Shown: one piece after another, positions 1 through 43,100 of the stretch | Layout: each line of letters starts with the position of its first letter | Numbering within the stretch: position 1 is the first letter of the stretch | Assembly: GCF_902652985.1 (NCBI RefSeq) | Contig: NC_047030.1 | Coordinates: 5,332,001-5,396,000, forward strand | Direction of reading: 5' to 3' | Length of the DNA: 64,000 nucleotides | Source: Pecten maximus | Taxonomy: Eukaryota | Translations under genes and position numbers: made by a program | The notes under the pieces: generated by a model | What the model was told of the DNA's origin: nothing | What the model saw: the letters and a program-made list of their open reading frames with translations, nothing else | Database searches by the model: none

Positions 1-17
1 TTACATAAATCACTTAC

Positions 18-3727: not shown

Positions 3728-3910
3728 CTGCTAGTGTTGTTGCTGCTGGTGCTGGTGTTGTTGCTGCTGGTGCTGATGTTGTTGCTGCTTTTGTTGTTGG
3801 CACTGCCGTTGTCGTTAGTTTTGTTGGATCTACACATTGTGGTTCGGCGCATTTACCGTTATTTACACATGTCTCATGTAATGTAGCTGTTTGTGAACAA
3901 ATGGTACCAC
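3728..3910 (-). CDS. Locus A exon: 4-Cys half-domain plus Thr/Ala/Pro linker (GTICSQTATLHETCVNNGKCAEPQCVDPTKLTTTAVPTTKAATTSAPAATTPAPAATTLA)
   Basis: Acceptor aattctgttacag, donor G|gtagag, 183 nt, phase 1-1. Overlaps ORF 3702..3947. Confidence 0.85.
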
Positions 3911-5029
3911 CTGTAACAGAATTTTCCCTAAAAAATTTCATTGACACACTGAGAATGAGATTGTGGATTCACTAATGTAACATTAAAACTGTTTCTCATT
4001 CAAGACAAAACTGATTTGCGTAATTGTATTATTTGGGGTTTGTATGCTATGTGAAGAATGAGATCACACATAAAGTAGCATAAATAAGGTCTCAAACAAC
4101 AAAAATGCACATGACACTATCGCTTTCTTATCCTTGCACTTTAATTATAGTTTTTTTTTAAATCTCACTTTCTCTCAACACCAAATACAATTTTCGTTCT
4201 TTGACAAAGCCGTTTTTGAAATGGAAAAAAAACCCCTCATAATACGTAGACTTGAATCATGACTGTAGCAGCGTACAATCTACGTAAGATAGTAGCCTCG
4301 CTCTCGATGTTATTGCATCACTCGCTCAAATATAGTCTTTAGACGGGATGAATACGAAAAGAATATTCCTAGTCAAGCCGGTCATTCACTGTCAAATAAA
4401 GTCAATAGAAGCAGAAATTGACAGTTGTTGTTGAGTAATCTGAATCGCCGACATTTATTCCGTGGGAGATCAACACATTAAACATCTGCTCGTCGTCGTT
4501 TAAAAAACAAATATACACCGATAATATTGTCCACTCTCTCGGTATCTCGGTATAATTTAAATTAATTTGTTAAAATTTGTAAATGAACGAACTTTGGTCA
4601 CAATCGTTTGATGGTGGCGTTCAAATGCTTCCTTACTTCTGTTTCTCATTATCATTTTTTTTCATACAAAATGATATATTCAGCTTACATCTGCATGTAA
4701 TACAGCACATATTGAAATGTATGGTGTTGGGTAATAAAAGCCGAATCTCGAATCCTGCTCCACCTTTCATGACAGGTAATTAATAATACAAGTGTGAACA
4801 TTATTTACGATAAACTTTGAAGTACTTTACTTCGATAAAGATTTACCGAGAACAAATATTCCTAGCCCCTGTTCCCTTGTGGTCCGATGTTCATCGGTCC
4901 GCCCGTAAACGCTTTTTACCTCCATATTCATACAAAACTATACGACGGATCTGTCTCAACTTCAAATTCAGCTTCTGACTTAGCTGTGTTAAATCGTTAG
5001 TCTGATCTATAACAGTGAATGGCCGACAG

Positions 5030-9300: not shown

Positions 9301-9372
9301 GAGATTTTTTATTTATTTTTTAATGATACCAACTGAGTTAATTTTTTTCATTGGTCCTATTCGGCTTCCGTA
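6350..9372 (+). mobile_element. IS3EU-like TIR element remnant with ~70-bp TIRs and inverted 21-bp subterminal arrays
   Basis: Ends TACGGAAGCCGAATAGGACCAAT ... ATTGGTCCTATTCGGCTTCCGTA. Arrays of tacgagaaataatctcgtata at 6420-6615 and 8780-9305. Relic peptide at about 6715-6835 (GFSNDDILSSLAISSYCVIRR*TLKRFLWQQYLSRRKNHS) resembles the N-terminus of IS3EU-type transposases. No matching 6-bp TSD visible. Confidence 0.7.
6974..7265. mobile_element. MITE (~290 bp) nested in the IS3EU-like element
   Basis: TIR ggccgttcatgtcaaaa / ttttgacatgaacggcc, with several internal ttaacgcgttaa palindromes. Confidence 0.75.
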
Positions 9373-10241
9373 GTTATTTAATCACGAGCCAAAATTATGT
9401 TATTCATTTTGTTGAGCAAATAATCTTACGGCAAGACAGTACAATCAAATTGAATTATTGGTCATGCAGAGAGCTCATTCGAACACTTTTAATAAAGCAG
9501 GAAGTACCATTAATGTAATAAAATGTTTGATTTGAGTTAGAACGTTTGAATGAAGTCTTAACAGTTGAAATATGGTAAAATTTAATGTGAATAATTCATT
9601 TTCGATTTCAACAAATTAAATTGAAAAAGAAAAAGGATCAAACAACTGGCATAGCCTGTGTAAGTTATCTATTCGATAAACAACTAGTATATGATATATA
9701 TACATTAAACATAATGTGATGTAATAACAAAATGAAGCAAACAGCATAAACCGATCAAAATAAATTGTCTGCTTGGAAAAATAATCCATTTTGATCAAGA
9801 TACTGTACCTAACATGTGGTGAAACAAGCGTTCACTAAGTTTAAAATGATTCCATACAAAAAATGTGCATCTGATAGCTTTATTCATGAAAATTTAATCA
9901 TAATGAAATTATATCCCAATGAAAAGGGGAGTTTGTTGGATGATATCCTTGTAAGGGAATATAGTAATTGCAATATGTAATCATTTGAATTTAGTGCATT
10001 AATTCATATCTTTAAGAAGAAAACCAATGTGCCGTATGGTTAGTCAATTACATTATAGTATTGCGTGAGTACATAGAATATTCTTGTCAAGGGGTTCTCT
10101 TGCACTCTATATTACTCGATATATTTCTATTTGAAGGATTTGGCTGACAACGACCACACTACGTAGGATGTTTGGTAACAAATATCCACATAAAAACATT
10201 TATAATTATAAAAATAATAGGCAACATAGTTTTACTGCATT

Positions 10242-10247
10242 TTTATT
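10242..10247 (-). terminator. Candidate polyadenylation signal AATAAA for gene B
   Basis: First AATAAA I found on the minus strand downstream of the stop codon (about 575 nt). Weak evidence in AT-rich DNA. Confidence 0.35.
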
Positions 10248-10820
10248 TTAGATTATAAACACAAATAAGTATATGATATCACAGCACAAGGTTGACCAAA
10301 TTAGACAAATGTATTGTCGATACATAACTTGAACATTTACAAAACGATTATGAACATATCATCAAATTTCCATAAATTAATTTAGTTACTTTTACAATCA
10401 TTTACAAATTCAATCATATAAAAGACCTAAAGAACTTAAAATCCAAATTACGATAAGAATTGTCTTCACTTCCAAGTAGATGAATATACTATTATGAAAA
10501 GGTTTACTTTTATATCAAATTAAATGAATTGTCTTAGCTACTAAATCTACTATCTGCATTTGAAAGAAAAATTGGTGATTGGAAAAATTAATGTATTATC
10601 TTGGAGGTATTTAAGTTACATCTTTGAAGATCATTACGATTGCTAGCTTAGATGTCACATGAAACGTATAAAAATCTCATATGTACGAACAAATGGCGTA
10701 CTCTCAATTTTTTTCCGTTCCAATCACATCATGTAAGTTGTGGTAAAATGTCATCCGTCATTGTGTTCAGTAAGCAATTCCATTGGCGTCGGGATGACAA
10801 ATGCTGTCTACAATAATCTA

Positions 10821-10894
10821 TCAGGGACTCAGGAACAGCTTTGTGACGACCCCAAATATCAGTATGAGGGGAGAGAATCTGTGGACGTCATTAC
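10821..10894 (-). CDS. Gene B terminal coding exon: GPI-signal-like tail GNDVHRFSPLILIFGVVTKLFLSP*
   Basis: Acceptor tatatgcttcag, phase 1, TGA at 10823-10821. The junction creates N-S-G (small omega, omega+1, omega+2 residues), followed by a short spacer and a C-terminal hydrophobic stretch with no cytoplasmic tail. Confidence 0.75.
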
Positions 10895-13800: not shown

Positions 13801-16800
13801 ACCCGTTACATATTAATTACCCTGTGTGGTGTGGGTCACACATGATCAGGCAGGTTTCCCCAATTAACTCCAAGGGGTCCATTTATAGCAGGCATTATAC
13901 CGATACCTTATCTAACTATAGGTATCCTCTCATAATATGTAAGTTAATAATTGACAAGATGAATGTACCTGTAGTCAGGTTTTATTAATACATCATTTAC
14001 AAACATGAAATAAATATAAAATCAAACCACTAGAATGTCTGAGGATGGAACTTAAATATTTCATATTGTTTCAGCATAGTATTAAGAATACACATTTCCT
14101 GCATCTGGCATGGATTGAATTCCTCTGGCCTTTATACCTTAAGACTGACATTTTGACAGAATATATTATATAGTCTAAATAAGAAATCTCTCTGTCAGCA
14201 AGTCTAAATTAGTACTGAATCAGAAGGTTTAATTGTGCTACATTCACGAACATGGGTAGCTTTACCTTCAAAACTTGACTTGCACACATAATATACAACA
14301 CATCAAATCATATAGCTCATAACAACATTTACCCAAGAAGTTAAGTGCACATCTTAGTGCACTTGGATTAACATTGTAGTGCACTGGGGTTAACATCGTA
14401 GTGCACTGGAGTTAACATTGTAGTGCACTGGAGTTAACATCGTAGTGAACTCAAATACGTGTGCACTACGAAGTGCACTTGGTACCAAGTTTAGTTTGCT
14501 CCCAACTGTAGGTGCAGTATATTTTAATTAATAACGTAAAATTTGGGGTAGTAGAGTATCTATAACAGATATCTATTTAAATTTATTCATTTATTTTTTG
14601 TGTTTTTTTTTATGTGTGGTATGAGGGTCACATGAACGTCATATAAGTTTGTCATACCGGAGTTCTTCTCTGTATCTGTAGAACTGGAGGTGGTACCTGA
14701 GTGAAGAATAACACATCAATTGTTAACAAATGTATGCGCATTATATGCAATGTAATAGTGACGTTACTATCAGCACAGCTATATTAAAAATCTTAATCTC
14801 CATAGACATAATCCGATTGTAATTGTAATGAAAGCATGCGATTACATCACCAAAACACAAATGGGGAATATTTTTCAATACATTTTTCGTTTAATAAGAA
14901 GCCTGATAACACTTGTTAAGAAATTTTACCTATTTTTAAATGGAACTTTTTCCGCAAGTCTTTATTTGAGTCAAATGTCTTATAATGTTGAAAGATGCGC
15001 GTCGTGAAGTGATTTACCATTCTAACTAATAATTCATGAGACACATTCACATCTTTCGATTTCTAATGTGTAGCATTGCGGAAAGTGTTAGTTCAAATCC
15101 AGCAATGATCCAATTACTAACATAATAAGAATCAATATTACTAAAATATATTCCTTGAATAAAACAGTTATCATTTCTGAATTTAAAACACTAATTGAAT
15201 GTGATGTACTCATGTTAATTTAATGTACTTGTATATGAATTACTTCCTCCTTATATTTGATTAGTTCCATCACCGGTAATGCCTATTAAGTAAGACGTTT
15301 ATATTTCAAGCTGACCACCTTGGGCTTCAACAACTACTATCACCTAATTCTCTATACAAGTGAGGTGTCCTTCACTACATAAAAAGGGATATCAAGCAAT
15401 ATTTTTTCAATTCATGCTATTATTTAAAGTGACACATGGAATGTTTTGATTTCCTTTTGTCAGTTTAAATTTCCCATCTTTTTGCATTAGGTACAGACAA
15501 TACGTGTGGACGACAAATTAAACGTATGCATCTAGATTAATGTATTCACAAGTTAAATACCAAGTTACACTTTGATAGCATTTTAATTTGTACTTATCAT
15601 TGTGGAAAAATAAATATGGAACCGTAAATGATCGGCCTACTATAGAAATAGGATTCAATTTGCTTATACTACTCTGTTGCGGAAGGGATTTAACCGCCAT
15701 AGTTTCATTTCAAGTAGGACTTTAACATATTAGTTTTACCAACAATATTTGTAATACAAAATGCGCTACTTTGACAGAAAATAATCTCACTGTTATTTAT
15801 CAACTTAAATCACACCCAATTATTATTAGGATGAAAACAGTGTCAATTATATTACATCTTTTACATCACAAAATCTCATTAATCTTTGCATTTCAAGTTT
15901 TTGAACTTTTTAGTTATCATCAATGCATTATACTATAAACTTTCATGGCAAATAAATCCAAAGGGTTAACGAAAGAAGGAATATATGAAACACTAAAACA
16001 GCAATCAACAATTCCTGTAGATGAAACTGGGATAGCGTTAGTTGACTATGACATCCAGCAATTATCGAAAAACAATTAATGTATGATTCGTCACCCAGTC
16101 TAGCATATTATGTGGATGCAAAAAAAACCCTACTTCATAAGCATCGTTAATGTTAAATGCTTGTACTAAAAGTAGGCATACATCAAAATAGTTAATGAAT
16201 CATTCTCAAACAGATGATATAGAAAGCGCGAGGATTTATTAGGAGGTTGCCAAAAAATGCATAGCTGCAGTATATTTTAATTAATAACGTAAAATTTGGG
16301 GTAGTAGAGTATCTATAATAGATATCTATATAAATTTATTCATTTATTTTTTGTGTTTTTTTTATGTGTGGTATGATGGTCACATGAACGTCATATAAGT
16401 TGGTCTTACCGGAGTTCTTCCCTGTATCTGTAGAACTGGAGGTGGTACCTGAGTGAAGAATAACACATCAATTGTTAACAAATGTATGCGCATTATATGC
16501 AATGTAATAGTGACGTTACTATCAGCACAGCTATATCAAAAATCATTACATGGGTGCATATGAATCTTTCCGTTCGGTTATTTATCTGCGATGGTCAGAT
16601 ATATCAATTCTTATAACCAAATAAAACCACATATTTAATCGAATTCTTTTAGAAAAAAATACTATGGGTTGATCGATTTATCATCTAACTAAATGTAATG
16701 TACTGCTGTATGAAATACCTCCTCCTTGTACTTGACTGGTTCCATCGCCAGTGTTACCAGTAAAGTAAGACGTTAATATGTCATATTGACCAACGAGGGT

Positions 16801-19800
16801 TGTAACCCAAATGCGCTGTTTTGACAGTAACTAATCTCATTTTGCGTTTCTTCATCTCCATAGACATAATCCGATTGTAATTGTAATGAAAACATGCGAT
16901 TACATCACCAAAACACAAATGGGGAATATTTCTCAATAATTTTCTCGTTTAATAAGAAGCATGATAAGACTTGTTCAGTAATTTTGCCTATTTTTACATG
17001 GAACTTTTTCTGCAAGTCTTTATTTGAGTCAAATGTCTTATAATGTTGAAAGATGCGCGTCGTGAAGTGATTTACCATTCTAACTAATAATTCATGAGAC
17101 ACATTCACATCTTTCGATTTCTAATGTGTAGCATTGCGGAAAGTGTTAGTTCAAATCCAGCAATGATCCAATTACTAACATAATAAGAATCAATATTACT
17201 AAAATATATTCCTTGAATAAAACAGTTATCATTTCTGAATTTAAAACACTAATTGAATGTGATGTACTCATGTTAATTTAATGTACTTGTATATGAATTA
17301 CTTCCTCCTTATATTTGATTAGTTTCATCACCGGTAATGCCTATTAAGTAAGACGTTTATATTTCAAGCTGACCACCTTGGGCTTCAACAACTACTATCA
17401 CCTAATTCTCTATACAAGTGAGGTGTCCTTCACTACATAAAAAGGGATATCAAGCAATATTTTTTCAATTCATGCTATTAATAAAAATTGACACATAAAA
17501 TGTTTTGATTTCCTTTTGTCAGTTTAAATTTCCCATCTTTTTGCATTAGGTACAGACAATACGTGTGGACGACAAAGTAAACGTATGCATCTAGATTAAT
17601 GTATTCACAAGTTAAATACCAAGTTACACTTTGATAGCATTTTAATTTGTACTTATCATTGTGGAAAAATAAATATGGAACCGTAAATGATCGGCCTACT
17701 ATAGAAATAGGATTCAATTTGCTAATACTACTCTGTTGCGGAAGGGATTTAACCGCCATAGTTTCATTTCAAGTAGGACTTTAACATATTAGTTTTACCA
17801 ACAATATTTGTAATACAAAATGCGCTACTTTGACAGAAAATAATCTCACTGTTATTCATCAACTTAAATCACACCCAATTATTATTCGGATGAAAACAGT
17901 GTCAATTTTATTACATCTTTTACATCACAAAATCTCATTAATCTTTGCATTTCAAGTTTTTGATTTTTTTAGTTATCATCAATGCATTATACTATAAACT
18001 TTCATGGCAAATAAATCCAAAGGGTTAACGAAAGAAGGAATATATGAAACACTAAAACAGCAATCAACAATTCCTGTAGATGAAACTGGGATAGCGTTAG
18101 TTGACTATGACATCCAGCAATTATCGAAAAACAATTAATGTATGATTCGTCACCCAGTCTAGCATATTATGTGGATGCAAAAAAAACCCCTACTTCATAA
18201 GCATTGTTAATGTTAAATGCTTGTACTAAAAGTAGGCATACATCAAAATAGTTAATGAATCATTCTCAAACAGATGATATAGAAAGCGCGAGGATTTATT
18301 AGGAGGTTGCCAAAAAATGCATAGCTGCAGTATATTTTAATTAATAACGTAAAATTTGGGGTAGTAGAGTATCTATAATAGATATCTATATAAATTTATT
18401 CATTTATTTTTTGTGTTTTTTAGGTGTGGTATGATGGTCACATGAACGTCATATAAGTTGGTCTTACCGGAGTTCTTCCCTGTATCTGTAGAACTGGAGG
18501 TGGTACCTGAGTGAAGAATAACACATAAATTGTTAACAAATGTATGCGCATTATATGCAATGTAATAGTGACGTTACTATCAGCACAGCTATATCAAAAA
18601 TCATTACATGGGTGCATATGAATCTTTCCGTTCGGTTATTTATCTGCGATGGTCAGATATATCAATTCTTATAACCAAATAAAACCACATATTTAATCGA
18701 ATTCTTTTAGAAAAAAATACTATGGGTTGATCGATTTATCATCTAACTAAATGTAATGTACTGCTGTATGAAATACCTCCTCCTTGTACTTGACTGGTTC
18801 CATCGCCAGTGTTACCAGTAAAGTAAGACGTTAATATGTCATATTGACCAACGAGGGTTGTAACCCAAATGCGCTGTTTTGACAGTAACTAATCTCATTT
18901 TGCGTTTCTTCATCTCCATAGACATAATCCGATTGTAATTGTAATGAAAACATGCGATTACATCACCAAAACACAAATGGGGAATATTTTTCAATAATTT
19001 TCTCGTTTAATAAGAAGCATGATAAGACTTGTTCAGTAATTTTGCCTATTTTTACATGGAACTTTTTCTGCAAGTCTTTATTTGAGTCAAATGTCTTATA
19101 ATGTTGAAAGATGCGCGTCGTGAAGTGATTTACCATTCTAACTAATAATTCATGAGACACATTCACATCTTTCGATTTCTAATGTGTAGCATTGCGGAAA
19201 GTGTTAGTTCAAATCCAGCAATGATCCAATTACTAACATAATAAGAATCAATATTACTAAAATATATTCCTTGAATAAAACAGTTATCATTTCTGAATTT
19301 AAAACACTAATTGAATGTGATGTACTCATGTTAATTTAATGTACTTGTATATGAATTACTTCCTCCTTATATTTGATTAGTTCCATCACCGGTAATGCCT
19401 ATTAAGTAAGACGTTTATATTTCAAGCTGACCACCTTGGGCTTCAACAACTACTATCACCTAATTCTCTATACAAGTGAGGTGTCCTTCACTACATAAAA
19501 AGGGATATCAAGCAATATTTTTTCAATTCATGCTATTAATAAAAATTGACACATAAAATGTTTTGATTTCCTTTTGTCAGTTTAAATTTCCCATCTTTTT
19601 GCATTAGGTACAGACAATACGTGTGGACGACAAAGTAAACGTATGCATCTAGATTAATGTATTCACAAGTTAAATACCAAGTTACACTTTGATAGCATTT
19701 TAATTTGTACTTATCATTGTGGAAAAATAAATATGGAACCGTAAATGATCGGCCTACTATAGAAATAGGATTCAATTTGCTAATACTACTCTGTTGCGGA

Positions 19801-22800
19801 AGGGATTTAACCGCCATAGTTTCATTTCAAGTAGGACTTTAACATATTAGTTTTACCAACAATATTTGTAATACAAAATGCGCTACTTTGACAGAAAATA
19901 ATCTCACTGTTATTCATCAACTTAAATCACACCCAATTATTATTCGGATGAAAACAGTGTCAATTTTATTACATCTTTTACATCACAAAATCTCATTAAT
20001 CTTTGCATTTCAAGTTTTTGATTTTTTTAGTTATCATCAATGCATTATACTATAAACTTTCATGGCAAATAAATCCAAAGGGTTAACGAAAGAAGGAATA
20101 TATGAAACACTAAAACAGCAATCAACAATTCCTGTAGATGAAACTGGGATAGCGTTAGTTGACTATGACATCCAGCAATTATCGAAAAACAATTAATGTA
20201 TGATTCGTCACCCAGTCTAGCATATTATGTGGATGCAAAAAAAACCCTACTTCATAAGCATCGTTAATGTTAAATGCTTGTACTAAAAGTAGGCATACAT
20301 CAAAATAGTTAATGAATCATTCTCAAACAGATGATATAGAAAGCGCGAGGATTTATTAGGAGGTTGCCAAAAAATGCATAGCTGCAGTATATTTTAATTA
20401 ATAACGTAAAATTTGGGGTAGTAGAGTATCTATAATAGATATCTATATAAATTTATTCATTTATTTTTTGTGTTTTTTTATGTGTGGTATGATGGTCACA
20501 TGAACGTCATATAAGTTGGTCTTACCGGAGTTCTTCCCTGTATCTGTAGAACTGGAGGTGGTACCTGAGTGAAGAATAACACATCAATTGTTAACAAATG
20601 TATGCGCATTATATGCAATGTAATAGTGACGTTACTATCAGCACAGCTATATCAAAAATCATTACATGGGTGCATATGAATCTTTCCGTTCGGTTATTTA
20701 TCTGCGATGGTCAGATATGTCAATTCTTATAACCAAATAAAACCACATATTTAATCGAATTCTTTTAGAAAAAAATACTATGGGTTGATCGATTTATCAT
20801 CTAACTAAATGTAATGTACTGCTGTATGAAATACCTCCTCCTTGTACTTGACTGGTTCCATCGCCAGTGTTACCAGTAAAGTAAGACGTTAATATGTCAT
20901 ATTGACCAACGAGGGTTGTAACCCAAATGCGCTGTTTTGACAGTAACTAATCTCATTTTGCGTTTCTTCATCTCCATAGACATAATCCGATTGTAATTGT
21001 AATGAAAACATGCGATTACATCACCAAAACACAAATGGGGAATATTTTTCAATAATTTTCTCGTTTAATAAGAAGCATGATAAGACTTGTTCAGTAATTT
21101 TGCCTATTTTTACATGGAACTTTTTCTGCAAGTCTTTATTTGAGTCAAATGTCTTATAATGTTGAAAGATGCGCGTCGTGAAGTGATTTACCATTCTAAC
21201 TAATAATTCATGAGACACATTCACATCTTTCGATTTCTAATGTGTAGCATTGCGGAAAGTGTTAGTTCAAATCCAGCAATGATCCAATTACTAACATAAT
21301 AAGAATCAATATTACTAAAATATATTCCTTGAATAAAACAGTTATCATTTCTGAATTTAAAACACTAATTGAATGTGATGTACTCATGTTAATTTAATGT
21401 ACTTGTATATGAATTACTTCCTCCTTATATTTGATTAGTTCCATCACCGGTAATGCCTATTAAGTAAGACGTTTATATTTCAAGCTGACCACCTTGGGCT
21501 TCAACAACTACTATCACCTAATTCTCTATACAAGTGAGGTGTCCTTCACTACATAAAAAGGGATATCAAGCAATATTTTTTCAATTCATGCTATTAATAA
21601 AAATTGACACATAAAATGTTTTGATTTCCTTTTGTCAGTTTAAATTTCCCATCTTTTTGCATTAGGTACAGACAATACGTGTGGACGACAAAGTAAACGT
21701 ATGCATCTAGATTAATGTATTCACAAGTTAAATACCAAGTTACACTTTGATAGCATTTTAATTTGTACTTATCATTGTGGAAAAATAAATATGGAACCGT
21801 AAATGATCGGCCTACTATAGAAATAGGATTCAATTTGCTAATACTACTCTGTTGCGGAAGGGATTTAACCGCCATAGTTTCATTTCAAGTAGGACTTTAA
21901 CATATTAGTTTTACCAACAATATTTGTAATACAAAATGCGCTACTTTGACAGAAAATAATCTCACTGTTATTCATCAACTTAAATCACACCCAATTGTTA
22001 TTCGGATGAAAACAGTGTCAATTTTATTACATCTTTTACATCACAAAATCTCATTAATCTTTGCATTTCAAGTTTTTGATTTTTTTAGTTATCATCAATG
22101 CATTATACTATAAACTTTCATGGCAAATAAATCCAAAGGGTTAACGAAAGAAGGAATATATGAAACACTAAAACAGCAATCAACAATTCCTGTAGATGAA
22201 ACTGGGATAGCGTTAGTTGACTATGACATCCAGCAATTATCGAAAAACAATTAATGTATGATTCGTCACCCAGTCTAGCATATTATGTGGATGCAAAAAA
22301 AAACCCTACTTCATAAGCATCGTTAATGTTAAATGCTTGTACTAAAAGTAGGCATACATCAAAATAGTTAATGAATCATTCTCAAACAGATGATATAGAA
22401 AGCGCGAGGATTTATTAGGAGGTTGCCAAAAAATGCATAGCTGCAGTATATTTTAATTAATAACGTAAAATTTGGGGTAGTAGAGTATCTATAATAGATA
22501 TCTATATAAATTTATTCATTTATTTTTTGTGTTTTTTATGTGTGGTATGATGGTCACATGAACGTCATATAAGTTGGTCTTACCGGAGTTCTTCCCTGTA
22601 TCTGTAGAACTGGAGGTGGTACCTGAGTGAAGAATAACACATCAATTGTTAACAAATGTATGCGCATTATATGCAATGTAATAGTGACGTTACTATCAGC
22701 ACAGCTATATCAAAAATCATTACATGGGTGCATATGAATCTTTCCGTTCGGTTATTTATCTGCGATGGTCAGATATATCAATTCTTATAACCAAATAAAA

Positions 22801-25800
22801 CCACATATTTAATCGAATTCTTTTAGAAAAAAATACTATGGGTTGATCGATTTATCATCTAACTAAATGTAATGTACTGCTGTATGAAATACCTCCTCCT
22901 TGTACTTGACTGGTTCCATCGCCAGTGTTACCAGTAAAGTAAGACGTTAATATGTCATATTGACCAACGAGGGTTGTAACCCAAATGCGCTGTTTTGACA
23001 GTAACTAATCTCATTTTGCGTTTCTTCATCTCCATAGACATAATCCGATTGTAATTGTAATGAAAACATGCGATTACATCACCAAAACACAAATGGGGAA
23101 TATTTTTCAATAATTTTCTCGTTTAATAAGAAGCATGATAAGACTTGTTCAGTAATTTTGCCTATTTTTACATGGAACTTTTTCTGCAAGTCTTTATTTG
23201 AGTCAAATGTCTTATAATGTTGAAAGATGCGCGTCGTGAAGTGATTTACCATTCTAACTAATAATTCATGAGACACATTCACATCTTTCGATTTCTAATG
23301 TGTAGCATTGCGGAAAGTGTTAGTTCAAATCCAGCAATGATCCAATTACTAACATAATAAGAATCAATATTACTAAAATATATTCCTTGAATAAAACAGT
23401 TATCATTTCTGAATTTAAAACACTAATTGAATGTGATGTACTCATGTTAATTTAATGTACTTGTATATGAATTACTTCCTTCTTATATTTGATTAGTTCC
23501 ATCACCGGTAATGCCTATTAAGTAAGACGTTTATATTTCAAGCTGACCACCTTGGGCTTCAACAACTACTATCACCTTAATATCTATACAAGTGAGGTGT
23601 CCTTCACTACATAAAAAGGGATATCAAGCAATATTTTTTCAATTCATGCTATTATTAAAAGTGACACATAAAATGTTTTGATTTCCTTTTGTCAGTTTAA
23701 ATTTCCCATCTTTTTGCATTAGGTACAGACAATACGTGTGGACGACAAAGTAAACGTATGCATCTAGATTAATGTATTCACAAGTTAAATACCAAGTTAC
23801 ACTTTGATAGCATTTTAATTTGTACTTATCATTGTGGAAAAATAAATATGGAACCGTAAATGATCGGCCTACTATAGAAATAGGATTCAATTTGCTAATA
23901 CTACTCTGTTGCGGAAGGGATTTAACCGCCATAGTTTCATTTCAAGTAGGACTTTAACATATTAGTTTTACCAACAATATTTGTAATACAAAATGCGCTA
24001 CTTTGACAGAAAATAATCTCACTGTTATTCATCAACTTAAATCACACCCAATTATTATTAGGATGAAAACAGTGTCAATTTTATTACATCTTTTACATCA
24101 CAAAATCTCATTAATCTTTGCATTTCAAGTTTTTGATTTTTTTAGTTATCATCAATGCATTATACTATAAACTTTCATGGCAAATAAATCCAAAGGGTTA
24201 ACGAAAGAAGGAATATATGAAACACTAAAACAGCAATCAACAATTCCTGTAGATGAAACTCGGATAGCGTTAGTTGACTATGACATCCAGCAATTATCGA
24301 AAAACAATTAATGTATGATTCGTCACCCAGTCTAGCATATTATGTGGATGCAAAAAAAACCCTACTTCATAAGCATCGTTAATGTTAAATGCTTGTACTA
24401 AAAGTAGGCATACATCAAAATAGTTAATGAATCATTCTCAAACAGATGATATAGAAAGCGCGAGGATTTATTAGGAGGTTGCCAAAAAATGCATAGCTGC
24501 AGTATATTTTAATTAATAACGTAAAATTTGGGGTAGTAGAGTATCTATAATAGATATCTATATAAATTTATTCATTTATTTTTTGTGTTTTTTTATGTGT
24601 GGTATGATGGTCACATGAACGTCATATAAGTTGGTCTTACCGGAGTTCTTCCCTGTATCTGTAGAACTGGAGGTGGTACCTGAGTGAAGAATAACACATC
24701 AATTGTTAACAAATGTATGCGCATTATATGCAATGTAATAGTGACGTTACTATCAGCACAGCTATATCAAAAATCATTACATGGGTGCATATGAATCTTT
24801 CCGTTCGGTTATTTATCTGCGATGGTCAGATATGTCAATTCTTATAACCAAATAAAACCACATATTTAATCGAATTCTTTTAGAAAAAAATACTATGGGT
24901 TGATCGATTTATCATCTAACTAAATGTAATGTACTGCTGTATGAAATACCTCCTCCTTGTACTTGACTGGTTCCATCGCCAGTGTTACCAGTAAAGTAAG
25001 ACGTTAATATGTCATATTGACCAACGAGGGTTGTAACCCAAATGCGCTGTTTTGACAGTAACTAATCTCATTTTGCGTTTCTTCATCTCCATAGACATAA
25101 TCCGATTGTAATTGTAATGAAAACATGCGATTACATCACCAAAACACAAATGGGGAATATTTTTCAATAATTTTCTCGTTTAATAAGAAGCATGATAAGA
25201 CTTGTTCAGTAATTTTGCCTATTTTTACATGGAACTTTTTCTGCAAGTCTTTATTTGAGTCAAATGTCTTATAATGTTGAAAGATGCGCGTCGTGAAGTG
25301 ATTTACCATTCTAACTAATAATTCATGAGACACATTCACATCTTTCGATTTCTAATGTGTAGCATTGCGGAAAGTGTTAGTTCAAATCCAGCAATGATCC
25401 AATTACTAACATAATAAGAATCAATATTACTAAAATATATTCCTTGAATAAAACAGTTATCATTTCTGAATTTAAAACACTAATTGAATGTGATGTACTC
25501 ATGTTAATTTAATGTACTTGTATATGAATTACTTCCTCCTTATATTTGATTAGTTCCATCACCGGTAATGCCTATTAAGTAAGACGTTTATATTTCAAGC
25601 TGACCACCTTGGGCTTCAACAACTACTATCACCTAATTCTCTATACAAGTGAGGTGTCCTTCACTACATAAAAAGGGATATCAAGCAATATTTTTTCAAT
25701 TCATGCTATTATTAAAAGTGACACATAAAATGTTTTGATTTCCTTTTGTCAGTTTAAATTTCCCATCTTTTTGCATTAGGTACAGACAATACGTGTGGAC

Positions 25801-28800
25801 GACAAAGTAAACGTATGCATCTAGATTAATGTATTCACAAGTTAAATACCAAGTTACACTTTGATAGCATTTTAATTTGTACTTATCATTGTGGAAAAAT
25901 AAATATGGAACCGTAAATGATCGGCCTACTATAGAAATAGGATTCAATTTGCTAATACTACTCTGTTGCGGAAGGGATTTAACCGCCATAGTTTCATTTC
26001 AAGTAGGACTTTAACATATTAGTTTTACCAACAATATTTGTAATACAAAATGCGCTACTTTGACAGAAAATAATCTCACTGTTATTCATCAACTTAAATC
26101 ACACCCAATTATTATTCGGATGAAAACAGTGTCAATTTTATTACATCTTTTACATCACAAAATCTCATTAATCTTTGCATTTCAAGTTTTTGATTTTTTT
26201 AGTTATCATCAATGCATTATACTATAAACTTTCATGGCAAATAAATCCAAAGGGTTAACGAAAGAAGGAATATATGAAACACTAAAACAGCAATCAACAA
26301 TTCCTGTAGATGAAACTGGGATAGCGTTAGTTGACTATGACATCCAGCAATTATCGAAAAACAATTAATGTATGATTCGTCACCCAGTCTAGCATATTAT
26401 GTGGATGCAAAAAAAAACCCTACTTCATAAGCATCGTTAATGTTAAATGCTTGTACTAAAAGTAGGCATACATCAAAATAGTTAATGAATCATTCTCAAA
26501 CAGATGATATAGAAAGCGCGAGGATTTATTAGGAGGTTGCCAAAAAATGCATAGCTGCAGTATATTTTAATTAATAACGTAAAATTTGGGGTAGTAGAGT
26601 ATCTATAATAGATATCTATATAAATTTATTCATTTATTTTTTGTGCTTTTTTATGTGTGGTATGATGGTCACGTGAACGTCATATAAGTTGGTCTTACCG
26701 GAGTTCTTCCCTGTATCTGTAGAACTGGAGGTGGTACCTGAGTGAAGAATAACACATCAATTGTTAACAAATGTATGCGCATTATATGCAATGTAATAGT
26801 GACGTTACTATCAGCACAGCTATATCAAAAATCATTACATGGGTGCATATGAATCTTTCCGTTCGGTTATTTATCTGCGATGGTCAGATATATCAATTCT
26901 TATAACCAAATAAAACCACATATTTAATCGAATTCTTTTAGAAAAAAATACTATGGGTTGATCGATTTATCATCTAACTAAATGTAATGTACTGCTGTAT
27001 GAAATACCTCCTCCTTGTACTTGACTGGTTCCATCGCCAGTGTTACCAGTAAAGTAAGACGTTAATATGTCATATTGACCAACGAGGGTTGTAACCCAAA
27101 TGCGCTGTTTTGACAGTAACTAATCTCATTTTGCGTTTCTTCATCTCCATAGACATAATCCGATTGTAATTGTAATGAAAACATGCGATTACATCACCAA
27201 AACACAAATGGGGAATATTTTTCAATAATTTTCTCGTTTAATAAGAAGCATGATAAGACTTGTTCAGTAATTTTGTCTATTTAACATGGAACTTTTTGTT
27301 CGATTTCTGTAAATGAAACTGGGATAGCGTTAGTTGATTATGATATCCAGCAATTTTCGAACTACAAGTAATGTATGATTTGTCACACAGTTTAGCATAT
27401 TATGTGGATGCAAAAAACTAATACATAAGCATCGTTAATGTTAAATGCTTGTACTAAAAGTAGGCAAACATCAAAACAGATGATATAGAAAGCACGAGGA
27501 TTGATTAGGAGGTTGTCACAAAATGCATAGCTGCAGTATATTTTCATTAAGGGTCTTAATCCTCTGCTCCAAATACACTTCCGAACTCAGTAGAGTATCT
27601 ATATCAGATATATATATAAACGTTATGTGTGTTGCGTATATATATATCATATTATATGATGTTAATATGAAAATCAATCTTGTAAGTATACTTATTAATA
27701 TTGAATACAGTTAATAACTAATCATTTCGTTGATATAGCTTTGGTCAAATGTTTAATTTCTTCAGTTTGATTAAAGTAATTTAGCCTCATTTCTTGTACT
27801 GAATAACCTTTACTTAGAATTTCACATTATATATGAATCTTGTTAAAAAACACTTTTGATAATAAATTTGATGTAAGGCGGGACGATCAACAGCTTGGTA
27901 GTTTCAGAAATCACAACGAGGAGACTGATACAATGAACACATGTACAAGTTTATTTACATAAAAATTAAAATTACAAACACATTCACTACTATTCATCTA
28001 TTCGAATACCAAAGTATCTACTCTTCACATGACAGGGATGATTCTGCGTCACTAAAGATACTGAAGTTGTAACTTCAAGTAGGCCCGTTCCAGCATCTAG
28101 CGGTTATGCGCCCACCATCTGAAGCTTTTACAAATATAAACAAACACCTACTAAACATCCTTTCGTGTACATTCATGATCAACATATATTAACAATCTAT
28201 GAAGTAATCTACAGCTCACCAATACATGATTTATTATTGTAAACTACTAATAATTATACCCTAAATATCAAAACAACGCTACAATATAAGGTGCTTGATG
28301 AAAACATTACTTAATTAATGAATTACTATCGTGATTTTGAAGGGAAGTGGCTCCTAGACCGTCATCAGATGCGTCAGTGCGTAAATCAAACTCTTGCTCA
28401 AGATCCGACAACTTCAAGACTTGTTTTGCAGTTGGCAACTCCTTACGAGTGGTGTTAGCTATTTCCTTACTTGAGTCTAATGCAACTTCGATGTGTGTTC
28501 CTTCTTTTTAGGATCCGCTAACGGCACGGCGATGGCAGCAAAGTTTAGTATGAAACGTTTGTAGAATCCCGCCACTCCTAGAAATCCTTTTGGTCGGGAG
28601 TCTTGGCGCATTTTCAGTGCCAGCGCTATCTTTGACTTTTCAAGTTGCAGTAAAACATTTCGAAAAACATGCCAATAGCACGGCAAACTCTTGAAGCTAA
28701 TGGAGTAGTAAGTTCCACCTTGCGTAGATGTGAGAAGAGCTCTTGTAGCATCAGCATATGCTCCTACCATATGCTAGTATATATTGGAATATCATATATG

Positions 28801-37083: not shown

Positions 37084-37124
<41 letters not shown>

Positions 37125-40100
37125 GGGGGGGGGGGGGGGGTAATTCCCGGTCAGTAGGCTGGGCCAGGATAACCGTGCAACAAATATGTATATACGAAGC
37201 ATGCATGCTATGATAAATATGATGAAGAGTCTAAGGCGTCATCATTCATCCATTCGTCATTATCATCATTCAAGCAACAACGAAACATTTATATATATTA
37301 TGGTTTCTTTTCTTATCTTGATAAAAATTATAATTCGAAAAACTCGACTTCGAAAATACTCGGATAATACGAAGTGAAAATTTTGTCTTAACAATAAAGT
37401 CTGATCTTTTGAAATTAATCGAATAACTCGTAGTATCGTGTTTGAGTCTAGCAACCGTCGGTAGTAATCGCCGGCATCTTTTAAACAACAAGTTCCCGGA
37501 CGTAATACTTAAGGTATCGGCACGATTATTATGCTATTAGAAGTGTTTAATGTATAAATTAAACAAAATTTCTGTGGAATCCAATAAAAACCACTCCCGG
37601 TAATCAAACGTACAATGTACTTATTTAGTTACACAGATAAGTTAAAGTGATCGCAGATGAATCTGCCCGCTCCACCCGCTCGCTCACTACGTAGTTAAAA
37701 TATCACAGTGTGGCCTGTACTTGTCTGGTGTTGTCACAGGTGTAGAAATGGAACGATCCCCTTTGCCTATTAAATCTTTAAATGTCTGAAACAATATCGT
37801 AATTACTGTATAGGAGTTCAGAGTACAGCTGTCTAAACGGTAACCCCTGTCTAATAAATCAGATAACATGCCAACTCAACAACAGAAGCATTTTATGTGT
37901 ACTTCAACTTCCTCGGTAAAACATACGTAAACCTACTAAACAGTATTTATTATATGTCCAGTGTAAGGGAATGGTTACGTTTGATAATATAATGTGTTTT
38001 AGATTTAAATTGTTATTTGATGTGACGTTAATAAGTTGTTATTCTGTTAAATTCCGCTTTATAGCTATTCCTTTCGCAAACATAACACTTACAAAACGAA
38101 ATACTGCACTGAACTTAATGGTGACAGAGCTCAGTTTTAATGATGCGAAACTGTTGACAAATATTGTCAAAACTTTGCACAAAAATGACAACTCGCTTGG
38201 TTCTGGCAAAACTGTCTTTCAAACATCCATTTACGTCAGCTTTCAATTTTTTTTTTTTTTAACAAAAATAATCAATTTTGACAAGCTGTTATTTTGTCCC
38301 GGGATAAACGAATGGATGGTCAGCCGATAAAAATTGCCGTAACTTGCGTAACGTATCCTTGAACAAATTGTTAACCTCAGAGAAACAAAAATTCTAGGAA
38401 AAATACTTTGAGAAAACAAGAAGGAAAATACTTCTTCAATTTTACTTTTAATTTGATTTGCACTTTGACATTTTTAATCATTTTACAGAATACATGGTAC
38501 TATTTATTTTTCACTTTTTCTTATAGAATACTACGTAACTGCATGAGACAGAACTGTTATTTGAATTCCATTCATAGTTAAAACTTACGTTTTTTTGTGA
38601 ACCAGCCAATAGGAATTCGATACGAGAAATCTATCTTTTCTGTGACATAGGATGATAATGATGTGTTAACTAATATTTCTTGATCGAATGACGAAGGTAG
38701 GTCCGTCGGTTACGTCAATCAGTGGAAGTGTGACTTAGTTTCCTTGGCAACTCTACGCACATATAGACTTTTTTATTACAATTAAAGCAAATATATATGA
38801 ACATTGACGGTTGTCATTTTCACCGAATGTGTTTTAATCTAACAGCCAAAAACGTCTTAAACAGGTGCAACATGTAGACCAGGATAAGTCCAAATAACCT
38901 AAACGAAACTCCAGTTCCATTTCCTGACGTAAACAGTATAATTAATGATAATGTTTTATAACTCAACGTTGGAACAAGGTTACTGTTTTCTATTCAATAT
39001 ATCGATAGCATTAAAAAAAATCCACTGTGAATCAATGCATTTTAGTTACACGTATAACAGCGACAGACAGAGAGAGATTTGAAAGTAGATTGCAAAGAAA
39101 CTGGACATGGATTTGTTCTACTCACCAGTTGATGTACCACATGTAGATTTGCAATGCCCCGTATTGCCATTCGGTCCACAAACAGTATTCTCAGCCACAC
39201 ATACTTTAAGATCGGCTGTCAGATGTGATAAACAGATACAATACCAATTACCTTACAAGACACAAGTAAGTGAAGACGAAAACCGACAGAATGTGTTAAC
39301 TTGTATATCTGATACAGTCAAATCTGGATTAACTAAACGATGACAATGTTTAGAATGATGCAGCAATGCCAGATGGCTTAAGGTTCAAACAAATAATTAG
39401 ATTTATAATCTTCCTTTCATTGAAGTGTTTACAAAGAGAAATAGTAGCTGCATTTTAAATAGTATAAAGTCATGACAAAGTCAAGTAAAACGTGTATGTA
39501 CATTATATTTGTCGCACACAATGTAGAAGTATTCCCTTAATTACTGTTAAATGCAGTGGCGATTCTTTCTGCATATTGAATTGAAATCAAAATTACCATT
39601 AAAATGTAGATGAAAATGAAACTTTTGCAATATTGTTCGAGCAATGTCTGTTAGCCTTGAAATATTTTCTATTCATTCTTGTGTGCCAAAATTAATGTGA
39701 CGTCATCATAAGCCTTTCAAATAGTCTAACTATATTCAAGATTCAAAGCCACGAGAGTTTTGTAATACTCTCATGTTACAGAAGCAACATTTTGATAGTT
39801 AGTATCACACTTAATGCTTTATTATTTTTCATGACATCTAGGATTATAAAACTGACAATTAGAAGCGTTGTGACAAAAAAAGTAATACGTACCGCCGGTA
39901 ATATGTCCGCTATCTGTTGCTATTTTGATAAAAAAAATATAGTATTAGAATCATTATTTTCCGCTGCATATGATAATGCAACAGGTAGGCTTAAAAGTTA
40001 GTTTTAATTCTTTAACTTCACTTTGTTAAATTGTACTTTAACAAAGCTCGGCCATCCATGAACAAGATATCATCACGTCTCATGAATTTATTATTTGATC

Positions 40101-43100
40101 TTAAAATGTAAAACTCAATTGTACTTATAAACGCGCTTGCTTATTTCCTTGAACTCCGTTTCAATAATAGACAAATATGTACAATAGTTTCAATTGCAAA
40201 ATCTAGAAAGACTTACCCTCGCATGTCCATTGACATGTCTTTCCACTTGAACAGGGAGTAGCGGTACAGTCTGGACCAGCTGTAATGTATATAAACCATT
40301 CTGTATACTTATACCATACTATATTATCTATTTTACTATTTAATATTTGTTGACTATCATTTAATGTCCTTTTATTGCCTTCGTGGATAGAGACAAATTA
40401 ATGATACTTCGCAGCCGACAGCGTATATTGTGTTTCTTCCATTAGCACATAACATGACATTATTTGAATATGGAATGTATCAAATTAACAACAAGGAATG
40501 AAACACAATACATGGCAGCGCCCTTCAATATTTAGCAAATGAAGCTTGAAACAATATATGTTTAAAGATTCATTTGTTTTCAAAAAAGAGGATAGGAAGA
40601 GAAGCTGAAACTTTTAGAAGGACAAAACTCTTCAAATAATCGTAAATAGACGAAACTCTTCAACGAGCCGACGCGTTTTCCGGACAAAATGCATGCGGAG
40701 ATGACCCGAAAAGGCGACATGGTGAGAGTCGATTATACAAACGCATGACCTTTCAACTCAGTATTGTAAATGAGGAATCTGGACAGGCTGAAGGAGCAGT
40801 TTGAAAAATGGTGTTCTGAAGGAGGAATTCAGCGATGTTTTCACGGATTAATGTGTTTTGGATGTAACAATTCGCATTGAATGATACGGTAGGACAAATA
40901 TAAATGTTTCTAGATGGCGGTGGTATGTAGTATGCGCCGTGTCAATTTGAAAAAATGTGTTTTTTAGTCGATTAAAGTGTGGTGGTGTGCCGTTTCGCTC
41001 GTGGCGGAGTTGCCAACATTGTACTTTACAGAGTATACATACCACTGTTTTATAAAAAAAAAAATGAAAATAACATTTTCTTATGCAAGCGCCTGTGGGT
41101 TTGATGGTACGCCCGCTTATCCCGTGACGATGTTTCACCAGATACAAAGTAGCTATATTTACCGCATGTCGGCATACCTTAGGATCCGTCGTTTACTAAG
41201 AGATGCTTACAGTTTGGGCACCCCCAACCTTGATATATGAATCTAGGAATGGATACGGCTAACAGGTTTGCATTTCGGATGATGTAGTTAACTTTGTAGA
41301 ATTATGAATTAAACCTTCACTCTAGGATGATGTTTTTGCTATAAAACAAGGCATACGGAAGCGAGGTACAGTGTATATTAGTGTTTGATGACACGTGGGA
41401 ACGAACTGCAGTGCATAGTAAATACAAAAACATGGATGTCCTACATTGTTTAGGTATCTTGTTGCAACAATAATATTTTCTTAAATTATATTTACCAGCT
41501 TGCGATGTTGTTTGTGCTTAATACACTTTTAAGTGAAATTACACATCGCCTTCTGTATTACATATTTAGTAAGGTAAGTTGTTGAATGGAATTACATTAA
41601 TATCGTTAGTGATTTTCACAAAGATTTATATTCCCATTGCACATGCGGGTTAATGTTGCGCCCACTTCTTTTGCTCGTGTTCTATGTTGTACATTTTTGA
41701 AACTTGTGAGTTCCGATGACGTCACATTGTTAACAGGTGCGGCGTTGTGTTTGCAATGTTTGAAGGCTATATTTACTGTTTTCGGTGCTTCTGTTCCTTT
41801 GAATATGTTATTGACGATGCATGATTTAAACATATCAAGTAATTTCATGTATAGATGAAGATTACTAGTAATTGAAATGGGCAAGTTACGTATACAATTT
41901 CAACTTTCAATGTGTCAGTGTATTTGTGATCGCGGTTGGGATTGGTGTCATTGCAACAATTAGGACGATGTTTTTACCACAGTGTTGAATCTACAAACTT
42001 GTACTAAAAACCAGATTTATTCAACACGATACATGATATGTTTTGGGAAATTATCTGCAAATAATCTACGAAAAGTAAATTAAATACGGTCCCGTTATCC
42101 GTGTATCAACGTAAATGCATGAGCATTGGCACTTACTTTTTAAATTGTCCTAGTGCACCCGTAGCTCAAAATCAGTTACATTGTAACTATAAGTAAGATG
42201 TTAAGATGGAAATAATAAAATATTGTCGTATTAACTTGTGATTATGTCTGAATTCGTCCAGAAACAACAACAAAGAACAAAGAACAAAAAAAACCATGCC
42301 AATTAAATGCCGATCTGGTAATTATGACATATATGTGCATTTGGAAGGCTTGTCGGCACTTTTTCTTTCGTTACTAAGAATGATTAGGACGCGCATCATG
42401 TTTATTAACACAATAAAATGCGACCATGGGGTGCACTGGTCTGTACCGACCGAGTGTTAATGTCTCCACTCGTGCTGACTACGTAACTACATGGAACGGT
42501 TCGATTTTATATACATGTACAACCAAGGTTCTTGATCATATAAAACCGGAAGAATTGAATACTGTCCTGCATTTATTCAGCAACCATCATTGGCAATATA
42601 CAACAACCAAAATAAATATTTTCGGCACCACAGAATAAAACCAACTTTAACAATAAAACATAAGAAGCAGCTATTACCCATAAGCATAAACTGCAAGCTA
42701 CAATGAAAGTAAGCAGCCAAAGCTTCTTTTAAGTGAAAGGAAAGTATAGAAGGGAAATATACAACAAACTTGCAAGTAGTAAATTACCAGCCAATGGCTT
42801 CTTTATCGTCATCCAACTTCCCACACATACGTGTTAAATTCACACCTATAAAGCATAACACTTTCCCATTCACAATGGTGCACACAAACTAGCATTCAGT
42901 TATTTCAATATAAAATACACAATCATAATTACTAGAACACATTCCCAAACTAAATAAGGCGTGAATACACCTCTCGTGGTTATGGATTGTAATCTTATAG
43001 CAAGTAAAGTATCAGGATCAGGCATAGAGACCACACGTTTCCCTCTTGTTCATCAACGTAACCTTACGTTGCGGCAGGACGACAACGCGAGGCCCAATGT

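What the first reader, a model, noticed from the sequence alone, without database searches (positions are those of the whole stretch)
14513..27610. A 2-kb tandem array is a microexon amplifier that sets the stalk length of a GPI-anchored Cys-rich protein
Seen: every ~2058-bp unit carries exactly one 39-nt phase-1 exon with intact AG/GT sites encoding GTTSSSTDT(G/E)KNS. The seven copies lie between the Cys-domain exons (39126-40279) and a GPI-like terminal exon (10821-10894). Established: symmetric phase-1 exons can be added or skipped without frameshift, and Ser/Thr-rich O-glycosylated stalks extend surface domains from the membrane. Inference: about 13 kb of recent duplication lengthened the protein from 108 aa (one copy) to 186 aa. 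Copy-number variation between individuals, or exon skipping, would tune how far the Cys domain projects, and any copy spliced last recreates the N-S-G omega site.
Basis: partly seen in the sequence, partly recalled or inferred. Interest (0 to 1): 0.88.

Follow-up and report, generated by a model that had tools for sequence, protein, structure and literature searches.

The report
Repeated 39-base exon array, scallop gene
In the king scallop, a 13-kb block of near-identical 2-kb repeats each supplies one 39-base exon that really is spliced into mRNA, giving a small, probably membrane-anchored protein a serine/threonine-rich region of variable make-up, a scallop example of exon-bearing repeat arrays known in human genes.

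Summary
Window 14509-27297 is a tandem array with a 2058-bp period and about 6.3 units. Inner units are 99.4-99.85% identical. It carries seven copies of a 39-nt phase-1 exon on the minus strand, found nowhere else in this 918-Mb Pecten maximus genome.

RNA contigs from three studies splice this microexon to the predicted terminal exon (10821-10894) exactly at the predicted AG/GT sites. One run also shows a microexon-to-microexon junction, so serial inclusion is real for at least two copies. These joints are absent from a DNA run.

Not shown:
- The link to the Cys exons (39126-40279). It is inferred from reading phase, from the absence of other exons of that kind in between, and from a related gene (LOC117321067) whose matching Cys exon joins a homologous GPI-like last exon.
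- That all seven copies are included.
- GPI anchoring, glycosylation, or any tuning of stalk length.

New here: each full unit also holds two further 39-nt cassettes, X without an AG acceptor and X' with an in-frame stop. Two other animals' transcripts carry different cassettes beside the last microexon, one of them absent from the reference genome. The locus therefore varies in cassette content, not only in copy number.

Verdict: a real, new variant of a known kind (LPA KIV-2-type coding repeat; GPIb-alpha-type stalk repeat).

The parts
14509..27297 (.). Tandem array, period 2058 bp, about 6.3 units. Unit 1 (14509-16357) lacks unit positions 188-491. The last unit is truncated at position 652.
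27303..27620 (.). Diverged relic (83-90% identical) of unit positions 1713-2037 at the gene-5' edge of the array.
14658..14696 (-). Microexon copy 1, the E-type (GTTSSSTDTEKNS), donor gtatga. It is the last cassette in the reference-type mRNA.
   Evidence: In RNA run X4 it is joined to the terminal exon (10894|14658) and to the next microexon (14696|16410).
16410..16448 (-). Microexon copy 2, G-type (GTTSSSTDTGKNS).
   Evidence: RNA joints 14696|16410 (X4) and 10894|16410 (X6, X8).
18468..18506 (-). Microexon copy 3, identical to copy 2.
20526..20564 (-). Microexon copy 4.
22584..22622 (-). Microexon copy 5.
24641..24679 (-). Microexon copy 6.
26699..26737 (-). Microexon copy 7, the first in the transcript.
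18777..18815 (-). Cassette X (39 nt, phase 1, GNTGDGTSQVQGG), with acceptor ..ttactg (no AG) and donor gtattt. There are six identical copies; the others are at 16719-16757, 20835-20873, 22893-22931, 24950-24988 and 27008-27046.
   Evidence: In run X8 an RNA contig joins a variant with two mismatches to a G-type microexon.
19360..19398 (-). Cassette X' (39 nt, 29/39 identical to X), with AG acceptor and GT donor but an in-frame TAA. There are six copies; the others are at 15244-15282, 17302-17340, 21418-21456, 23476-23514 and 25533-25571.
10821..10894 (-). Terminal coding exon, GNDVHRFSPLILIFGVVTKLFLSP*. It looks like a GPI signal and is homologous to the last exon of the related gene LOC117321067.
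10235..10820 (-). 3' UTR. AATAAA lies at 10242-10247, and RNA contigs end near 10235-10237.
39126..39215 (-). Exon B, the second half of the 8-Cys domain (ADLKVCVAENTVCGPNGNTGHCKSTCGTST), phase 1-1. Its link to the array is inferred.
40217..40279 (-). Exon A, the first half of the 8-Cys domain (GPDCTATPCSSGKTCQWTCE), phase 1-1.
46339..46396 (-). Candidate signal-peptide exon (MYLMSIIFCLTLALVQC, phase-1 donor gtgagt). About 95% identical, introns included, to the matching place on contig C3751.
46861..46863 (-). Possible upstream ATG at the end of exon 1 (ACCATG|gtatgt).

Best explanation
The array is a real, expressed, exon-bearing coding repeat inside the long last intron region of a lineage-restricted king-scallop gene.

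The gene most likely encodes, in order:
- a signal peptide;
- one 8-cysteine domain made from two phase-1 exons;
- a run of 13-residue Ser/Thr-rich cassettes, one 39-nt exon per 2058-bp unit;
- a C-terminal GPI-attachment-like signal.

Every internal exon is phase 1-1, so unequal crossing-over between the near-identical units adds or removes cassettes without breaking the frame. The spliceosome then joins successive cassettes in series. The last cassette always ends ..K-N-S and meets the Gly of the terminal exon.

Shown:
- the array and its exons;
- microexon-to-terminal-exon splicing and microexon-to-microexon splicing;
- that animals differ in which cassettes lie next to the terminal exon.

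Inferred:
- that the cassettes belong to the same mRNA as the Cys exons;
- that all seven copies are included;
- that the tail directs GPI anchoring;
- that the cassettes form an O-glycosylated spacer.

Length and cassette variation is most simply a by-product of a fast-evolving locus prone to recombination. Adaptive 'tuning' is possible but has no evidence.
For: Array and exons:
- Searches give the array, its unit identities and the private variants in each unit.
- Searches give seven intact AG/GT microexons.
- One search shows they are unique to this locus.

RNA evidence:
- Canonical GT..AG joints at 10894|14658 and 14696|16410 in X4, and at 10894|16410 in X6 and X8. These runs come from three studies.
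- None of these joints is in DNA run X5.
- The cyclic microexon contig has depth 985, against 112 for the 3' end.
- Contigs run on to about 10235, just past an AATAAA.

Coding frame: one search shows the frame is open and the total is a multiple of 3, 561 nt, with seven copies.

The related gene:
- the only relative of exon B among 1.84 billion proteins is P. maximus LOC117321067. Its B-type exon is followed by a terminal exon reading GKNGSIKCGLSPLIMICGALAMLFLRP*.
- that terminal exon and the start of its 3' UTR are homologous to the window's.
- the signal-peptide exon is conserved at the related locus.

Variation between animals: searches show that the X8 and X6 transcripts carry other cassettes.
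Against: - No read or contig seen here joins exon B (39126) to a microexon.
- No database protein contains exon B of this gene, so the gene seems to be unannotated.
- The copy number of seven rests on one PacBio CLR/wtdbg2 assembly (PMC7191990).
- In DNA run X5 the summed k-mer depth over the unit is only 1.2-4.2 times that of the single-copy flank. That is fewer than 6.3, though the tool warns this figure is not a copy number.
- Contig depth is a poor measure of copies per mRNA.
- The cassettes have no proline, unlike classic mucin repeats.
- No GPI or signal-peptide predictor could be run.
Confidence: 0.7

Rival explanations
1. The microexons and the GPI-like exon belong to a separate transcript with its own 5' exon somewhere in 27.6-39.1 kb, or they use the Cys exons only in some isoforms. 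On this reading the 'stalk' is not attached to the 8-Cys domain.
For: No junction between exon B and a microexon was observed (one search covered only 10721-16700). No database protein holds exon B of this gene. The interval is 11.5 kb long and includes an odd, GC-richer block at 28-34 kb.
Against: Phase 1 matches at exon B's donor and the microexon's acceptor. The scan found no other credible phase-1 exon in the interval and no signal-peptide-like start there. In the related gene a B-type exon is spliced directly to the homologous terminal exon. A protein made only of cassettes and a GPI signal would have no signal peptide.
Confidence: 0.15
2. The copy number in the reference is an assembly artefact. 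The real array is shorter, or longer, than seven units, because a noisy long-read assembler mis-resolved near-identical 2-kb repeats.
For: The assembly was made with wtdbg2 from PacBio CLR reads (PMC7191990). Units are 99.4-99.85% identical. In DNA run X5 the depth over the unit is only about 1.2-4.2 times the flank.
Against: Each unit carries its own substitutions. The microexon-microexon junction in RNA requires at least two copies, and the depth ratio of 8.8 in X4 fits many copies. X5 is a different animal, so a lower depth there may reflect true copy-number variation.
Confidence: 0.2
3. The hydrophobic C-terminus is not a GPI signal. It is a short tail anchor or a retained hydrophobic propeptide of a secreted peptide, and the cassettes are a linker or propeptide rather than a surface stalk.
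For: The tail contains a Lys (LILIFGVVTKLFLSP), its mean hydropathy is moderate at 2.05, and no predictor was run. Many small, variable Cys-rich bivalve proteins are secreted effectors (general knowledge).
Against: Small residues N-S-G, an 8-residue polar spacer and a 15-residue hydrophobic end with nothing after it form the standard GPI pattern. The same layout is kept in the related gene despite 50-60% sequence change.
Confidence: 0.3

Closest known systems
Human LPA kringle IV type 2 coding repeat (5.6-kb unit with two exons, 1-40 units per allele; PMC6314250, PMC11462820)
   Same: Both have multi-kb, near-identical tandem units made mostly of intron. Each unit contributes in-frame exon sequence that is spliced in series, so the number of units sets protein length.
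   Different: Here the unit carries one 39-nt microexon encoding 13 unstructured residues, not a folded 114-residue kringle. Units also carry dead or alternative cassettes. Copy-number polymorphism is not yet measured.
Platelet glycoprotein Ib-alpha 13-residue repeat polymorphism in the mucin-like macroglycopeptide (Lopez et al. 1992, cited in PMC6322330)
   Same: A 39-nt, 13-residue Ser/Thr-rich repeat lies between a ligand-binding head and the membrane, and its copy number changes the length of the stalk.
   Different: The GPIb-alpha repeats are contiguous within one exon and rich in proline. Here each repeat is its own exon about 2 kb from the next, has no proline, and sits in a protein that is probably GPI-anchored, not transmembrane.
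Schistosome micro-exon genes, MEGs (PMC10526429, PMC5825161)
   Same: A secreted or surface protein is built from a signal-peptide exon, many short symmetric exons separated by long introns, and a conventional last exon. The architecture allows protein variation without frameshifts.
   Different: There is no sequence relation and the phylum differs. MEG microexons differ from one another, whereas these are near-identical copies made by one tandem amplification. MEG variation comes from alternative splicing, which is not shown here.
Pecten maximus LOC117321067 (P0002), on unplaced contig C3751
   Same: It is the only detectable relative. It has the same A/B two-exon 8-Cys module with identical Cys spacing, a homologous GPI-like terminal exon and 3' UTR start, and a nearly identical signal-peptide exon.
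   Different: It has two Cys modules and no microexon array. Its B-type exon joins the last exon across a 1.5-kb intron. Its Cys exons are only about 66% identical at the protein level.

Membership tests
Exon-bearing multi-kb coding tandem repeat (LPA KIV-2 type) | Head-to-tail kb-sized units of high identity | tested here: met
   Period 2058 bp, about 6.3 units, 99.4-99.85% identity.
Exon-bearing multi-kb coding tandem repeat (LPA KIV-2 type) | Each unit holds whole exon(s) whose summed length is a multiple of three | tested here: met
   One 39-nt phase 1-1 exon with AG/GT in each unit.
Exon-bearing multi-kb coding tandem repeat (LPA KIV-2 type) | Exons of successive units are spliced in series in mRNA | tested here: met
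   The 14696|16410 joint in RNA run X4 is absent from DNA run X5. This shows at least two copies; a depth ratio of 8.8 hints at more.
Exon-bearing multi-kb coding tandem repeat (LPA KIV-2 type) | Unit number differs between individuals | tested here: inconclusive
   Three animals show three different cassette arrangements next to the last exon. Depth in DNA run X5 is lower than expected for 6.3 units, but contig depth is not a copy number.
Schistosome micro-exon genes (MEG) | Internal coding exons are short and symmetric, lying between a signal-peptide exon and a conventional last exon | tested here: met
   Internal exons are 63, 90 and 7 x 39 nt, all phase 1-1.
Schistosome micro-exon genes (MEG) | Sequence relation to a MEG family | tested here: not met
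   No Pfam family matches. The only relative is a P. maximus gene. The resemblance is in architecture only.
GPI-anchored surface protein | C-terminal signal: small omega to omega+2 residues, a polar spacer, and a hydrophobic end with no cytosolic tail | tested here: met
   N-S-G, then NDVHRFSP, then LILIFGVVTKLFLSP*, with mean hydropathy 2.05 over the last 15 residues. The related gene keeps the same layout. This is a rule of thumb only; no NetGPI run was possible.
GPI-anchored surface protein | N-terminal signal peptide in the same mRNA | tested here: inconclusive
   The candidate exon 46339-46396 encodes MYLMSIIFCLTLALVQC and is conserved at the related locus. No RNA link and no predictor were available.
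GPI-anchored surface protein | Lipid anchor shown by PI-PLC release or mass spectrometry | not testable with these tools
   This needs a bench experiment.
Mucin-like O-glycosylated stalk | Tandem Ser/Thr-rich repeats | tested here: met
   8 of 13 residues are Ser or Thr in each cassette.
Mucin-like O-glycosylated stalk | Proline-rich (PTS) composition | tested here: not met
   The cassette has no proline.
Mucin-like O-glycosylated stalk | O-glycans actually attached | not testable with these tools
   This needs a glycosidase shift assay or glycoproteomics.

The most novel reading that the evidence does not exclude
The locus is a cassette-exon diversity system. Haplotypes in the scallop population carry different sets and numbers of 30-39-nt phase-1 cassettes (M, X, X', and a 30-nt cassette absent from the reference) behind a conserved signal peptide. 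Individuals would then display different surface proteins, a mollusc counterpart of schistosome micro-exon genes, generated by recombination within a macrosatellite rather than by splicing choice, and possibly serving immunity or self/gamete recognition.
Probability: 0.25. Interest if true: 0.7.

Novelty: new variant of a known kind. Interest (0 to 1): 0.5.

Why it matters
This is a clean case, backed by RNA, of a protein region built by amplifying a 2-kb unit of intron plus microexon. It shows that symmetric microexons can be multiplied by ordinary unequal crossing-over and are still recognised one after another by the splicing machinery.

It gives bivalve genomics, where presence/absence and structural variation are extreme (PMC7653742), a tractable locus for asking how such variation changes a surface protein.

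The gene appears to be missing from the public annotation, and its only relative is modelled incompletely. Gene finders are evidently missing this kind of gene.

If stalk length or cassette make-up proves to be polymorphic and functional, the locus would be an invertebrate parallel to LPA or GPIb-alpha.

Tried and rejected
- Genome-wide repeat or transposon as the source of the microexon: rejected. The microexon and its flanks occur only in this array. A search with the whole 2058-bp unit could not be scored because it gave too many candidates.
- Known RNA families in the window: none.
- Known protein family for the Cys domain: no Pfam family, apart from a sub-threshold teneurin-EGF hit on a neighbouring gene's exon. 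There is no relative among solved structures. The protein atlas gave only weak unnamed clusters and a poor model.
- Hit P0001 from the protein search is a repetitive, unrelated protein and was discarded.
- Looking for an annotated product or transcript-derived protein fragment that holds exon B: none of 24-77 aa. P0002 finds only itself.
- Homology between cassette X and the microexon: none (15/39 identical; local alignment no better than shuffles).
- Homology between the microexon and the terminal exon: none.
- The idea that the microexon is the split-off 5' part of an ancestral last exon rests on a 30-nt acceptor-region alignment to the related gene (score 26 against a shuffle maximum of 24). 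BLAST did not recover it, so it stays a weak lead.
- Whether C3751 is a paralogue or a diverged haplotig: two probes landed in transposons and settled nothing.
- The spliced protein was never assembled, typed or searched. Exons were handled one by one by reference and lengths were obtained by arithmetic.
Full report
**Source.** The window is G000:C16:5332001-5396000 of a 918,306,378-bp assembly in 3,983 scaffolds. These figures match the king scallop Pecten maximus assembly, built from PacBio CLR reads with wtdbg2 and reporting 1.71% heterozygosity (PMC7191990). The one protein relative found is named by NCBI as a P. maximus protein. The window has no N.

**Observation.** Direct repeats recur every 2057-2059 bp. 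A reference unit aligns over 14509-27297. That span is a short unit end, a unit lacking 304 bp, five full units and a last partial unit of 652 bp. An 83%-identical relic follows at 27303-27620.

Inner units are 99.4-99.85% identical and each has private substitutions. The gene-3' edge unit is 98.2% identical to the rest. Diverged edges around a uniform interior are the usual mark of an array kept homogeneous by unequal exchange, so 'recent' is not the only reading.

On the minus strand each unit has ..actcag|39 nt|gtaaga, encoding G-TTSSSTDTGKNS in phase 1. The seven copies are at 14658-14696 (Glu variant, donor gtatga), 16410-16448, 18468-18506, 20526-20564, 22584-22622, 24641-24679 and 26699-26737. 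The microexon with its flanks occurs nowhere else in the genome. A crude splice-signal scan of the 28 kb between exon B and the last exon picks out these exons and almost nothing else.

**Expression.** The 3' end (10230-10900) is held by RNA runs from several studies. I laid contigs of three RNA runs and one DNA run on 10721-16700.
- X4 has a 702-nt contig that joins the terminal exon to the Glu-type microexon at 10894|14658.
- X4 has a second contig that joins a microexon to the next one at 14696|16410.
- X6 and X8 join the terminal exon to a Gly-type microexon at 10894|16410.
- All skipped stretches read GT..AG on the gene strand.
- None of the joints is in DNA run X5, so they are splices and not a processed DNA copy.
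- Contigs run about 485 nt past 10721, to about 10235, just beyond an AATAAA at 10242-10247.

The microexon-microexon contig starts at the exon's first base and stops just before the Gly/Glu variant base. That is what a k=31 graph does with a 39-nt cycle. Its depth is 985, against 112 for the 3'-end contig. This fits several cassettes per mRNA, but the tool warns that contig depth is not a count.

**Variation.** Upstream of the last microexon, the X8 contig continues with 28 nt that match, with two mismatches, a sequence present six times in the array and nowhere else. That sequence is a second 39-nt phase-1 cassette, X (GNTGDGTSQVQGG, donor gtattt). In the reference it lacks an AG acceptor.

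A sister cassette X', 29/39 identical to X, has AG and GT but an in-frame TAA.

The X6 contig carries a 30-nt phase-1 stretch (DNANSPDTDS) that has no match in the reference genome with up to three mismatches. The arithmetic of contig lengths suggests that another 39 nt lies before it.

The reference's last unit is itself peculiar: it has the Glu variant, a 304-bp deletion that removed X, and 1.8% divergence. So animals differ in cassette content at this locus. A simple 39-nt ladder was not demonstrated.

In DNA run X5 the summed depth over the unit is 1.2-4.2 times that of the flank. This hints at fewer units in that animal, but it is not a measurement.

**Gene model.** Exon A (40217-40279) and exon B (39126-39215) are both phase 1-1 and together give eight cysteines. 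A hydrophobic exon at 46339-46396 (MYLMSIIFCLTLALVQC) ends in a phase-1 gtgagt donor.

No contig seen here links exon B to a microexon, so that link is inferred. The grounds are matching phase, the lack of any other exon of that type or any start in between, and the one relative.

A 31-residue exon-B query against 1.84 billion proteins found only LOC117321067 (P0002), on unplaced contig C3751. Mapped back to that contig, the relative has A- and B-type exons with the same Cys spacing. Its last B-type exon is followed, 1.5 kb on, by a terminal exon reading GKNGSIKCGLSPLIMICGALAMLFLRP*. That exon and the start of its 3' UTR are homologous to the window's. The relative has no microexon or unit sequence.

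**Likely working.**
- The tail has small residues N-S-G, an 8-residue polar spacer and a 15-residue hydrophobic end with nothing after it. The related gene keeps the same layout. This is the textbook pattern of a GPI signal, but no predictor was available.
- The cassettes are 62% Ser/Thr and have no proline. Mucin-type O-glycosylation is plausible from general knowledge and is untested.
- Because every cassette ends ..AAC TCC G and the last exon starts GT, any last cassette gives N-S-G. This follows directly from the sequence.
- Unequal crossing-over between units is the obvious way copies are gained and lost.

**Comparison with known systems.**
- The closest mechanism is the human LPA KIV-2 repeat (PMC6314250, PMC11462820).
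- The closest functional analogy is the 13-residue repeat of platelet GPIb-alpha (reference in PMC6322330).
- The closest architecture is that of the schistosome micro-exon genes (PMC10526429). No sequence relation to them exists.
- The Cys domain has no Pfam, solved-structure or atlas relative.

**Verdict.** The 'amplifier' picture is right as anatomy and partly as expression. The claim about tuning stalk length is untested. This is a new variant of a known kind, of moderate interest.

Noticed in passing
window 43264-58152 and 46300-46900; C3751 (loci L017-L024) 13002-27993: Unplaced contig C3751 is collinear with the gene's upstream flank at 85-94% identity. It is about 95% identical across exon 1, its intron and the signal-peptide exon. 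The Cys exons, by contrast, are only about 66% identical at the protein level, and the 3' part is unrelated. The pattern is a conserved signal peptide with a divergent mature part. Whether C3751 is a paralogue or a very diverged haplotig is unresolved.
   Followed up: partly
C3751 30681-35623 (loci L021, L018): The NCBI model LOC117321067 (P0002) starts at a Met inside a B-type exon. It omits the upstream A-type exon at 29717-29770 and the conserved signal-peptide exon, so the public model looks truncated at its 5' end.
   Followed up: partly
window 10783-10815 (loose ends): All three RNA runs contain a third version of the terminal exon and 3' UTR (..KLFLCP*) that matches the window only over 33 nt. 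It has no match in the reference genome with up to three mismatches. An expressed family member or allele is therefore missing from the assembly.
   Followed up: partly
window 11197-11331 and 14349-14451: The same 22-bp minisatellite (AGTTAACATCGTAGTGCACTTG) lies at both ends of the 3.8-kb last intron, next to the array's edge. DNA contigs of another animal join the two blocks. This could be a recombination substrate.
   Followed up: no
window 12121-12720: A very high-copy element sits inside the last intron, with k-mer depth up to about 67,000 in a DNA run where single-copy depth is about 33. It is presumably a transposon or SINE.
   Followed up: no
window 28000-34000; 30267-30297, 34276-34302, 37114-37140: A block of higher GC (40-44%, against about 32%) with strong negative GC skew lies between the array and exon B. 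It is flanked by long homopolymers (C31, G27, (GA)13 followed by G27). It may be an insertion of foreign or mobile DNA.
   Followed up: no
window 15244-15282 and five more copies: Cassette X' has intact AG/GT sites and an in-frame TAA. If it were ever included it would act as a poison exon and truncate the protein before the GPI signal.
   Followed up: no
window 13-153 and 3705-3968 (minus strand): Further A- and B-like Cys modules lie downstream. One runs into a Thr/Ala/Pro-rich linker within the same exon. The family therefore forms a local cluster and also uses mucin-like linkers elsewhere.
   Followed up: no
window 9004-9304 and 58588-59336: A 21-bp tandem repeat of 14 copies has a partly palindromic unit. 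Separately, a long repeat on the plus strand is open in three frames (..HDITCVS.. / ..ISPVYQ..).
   Followed up: no
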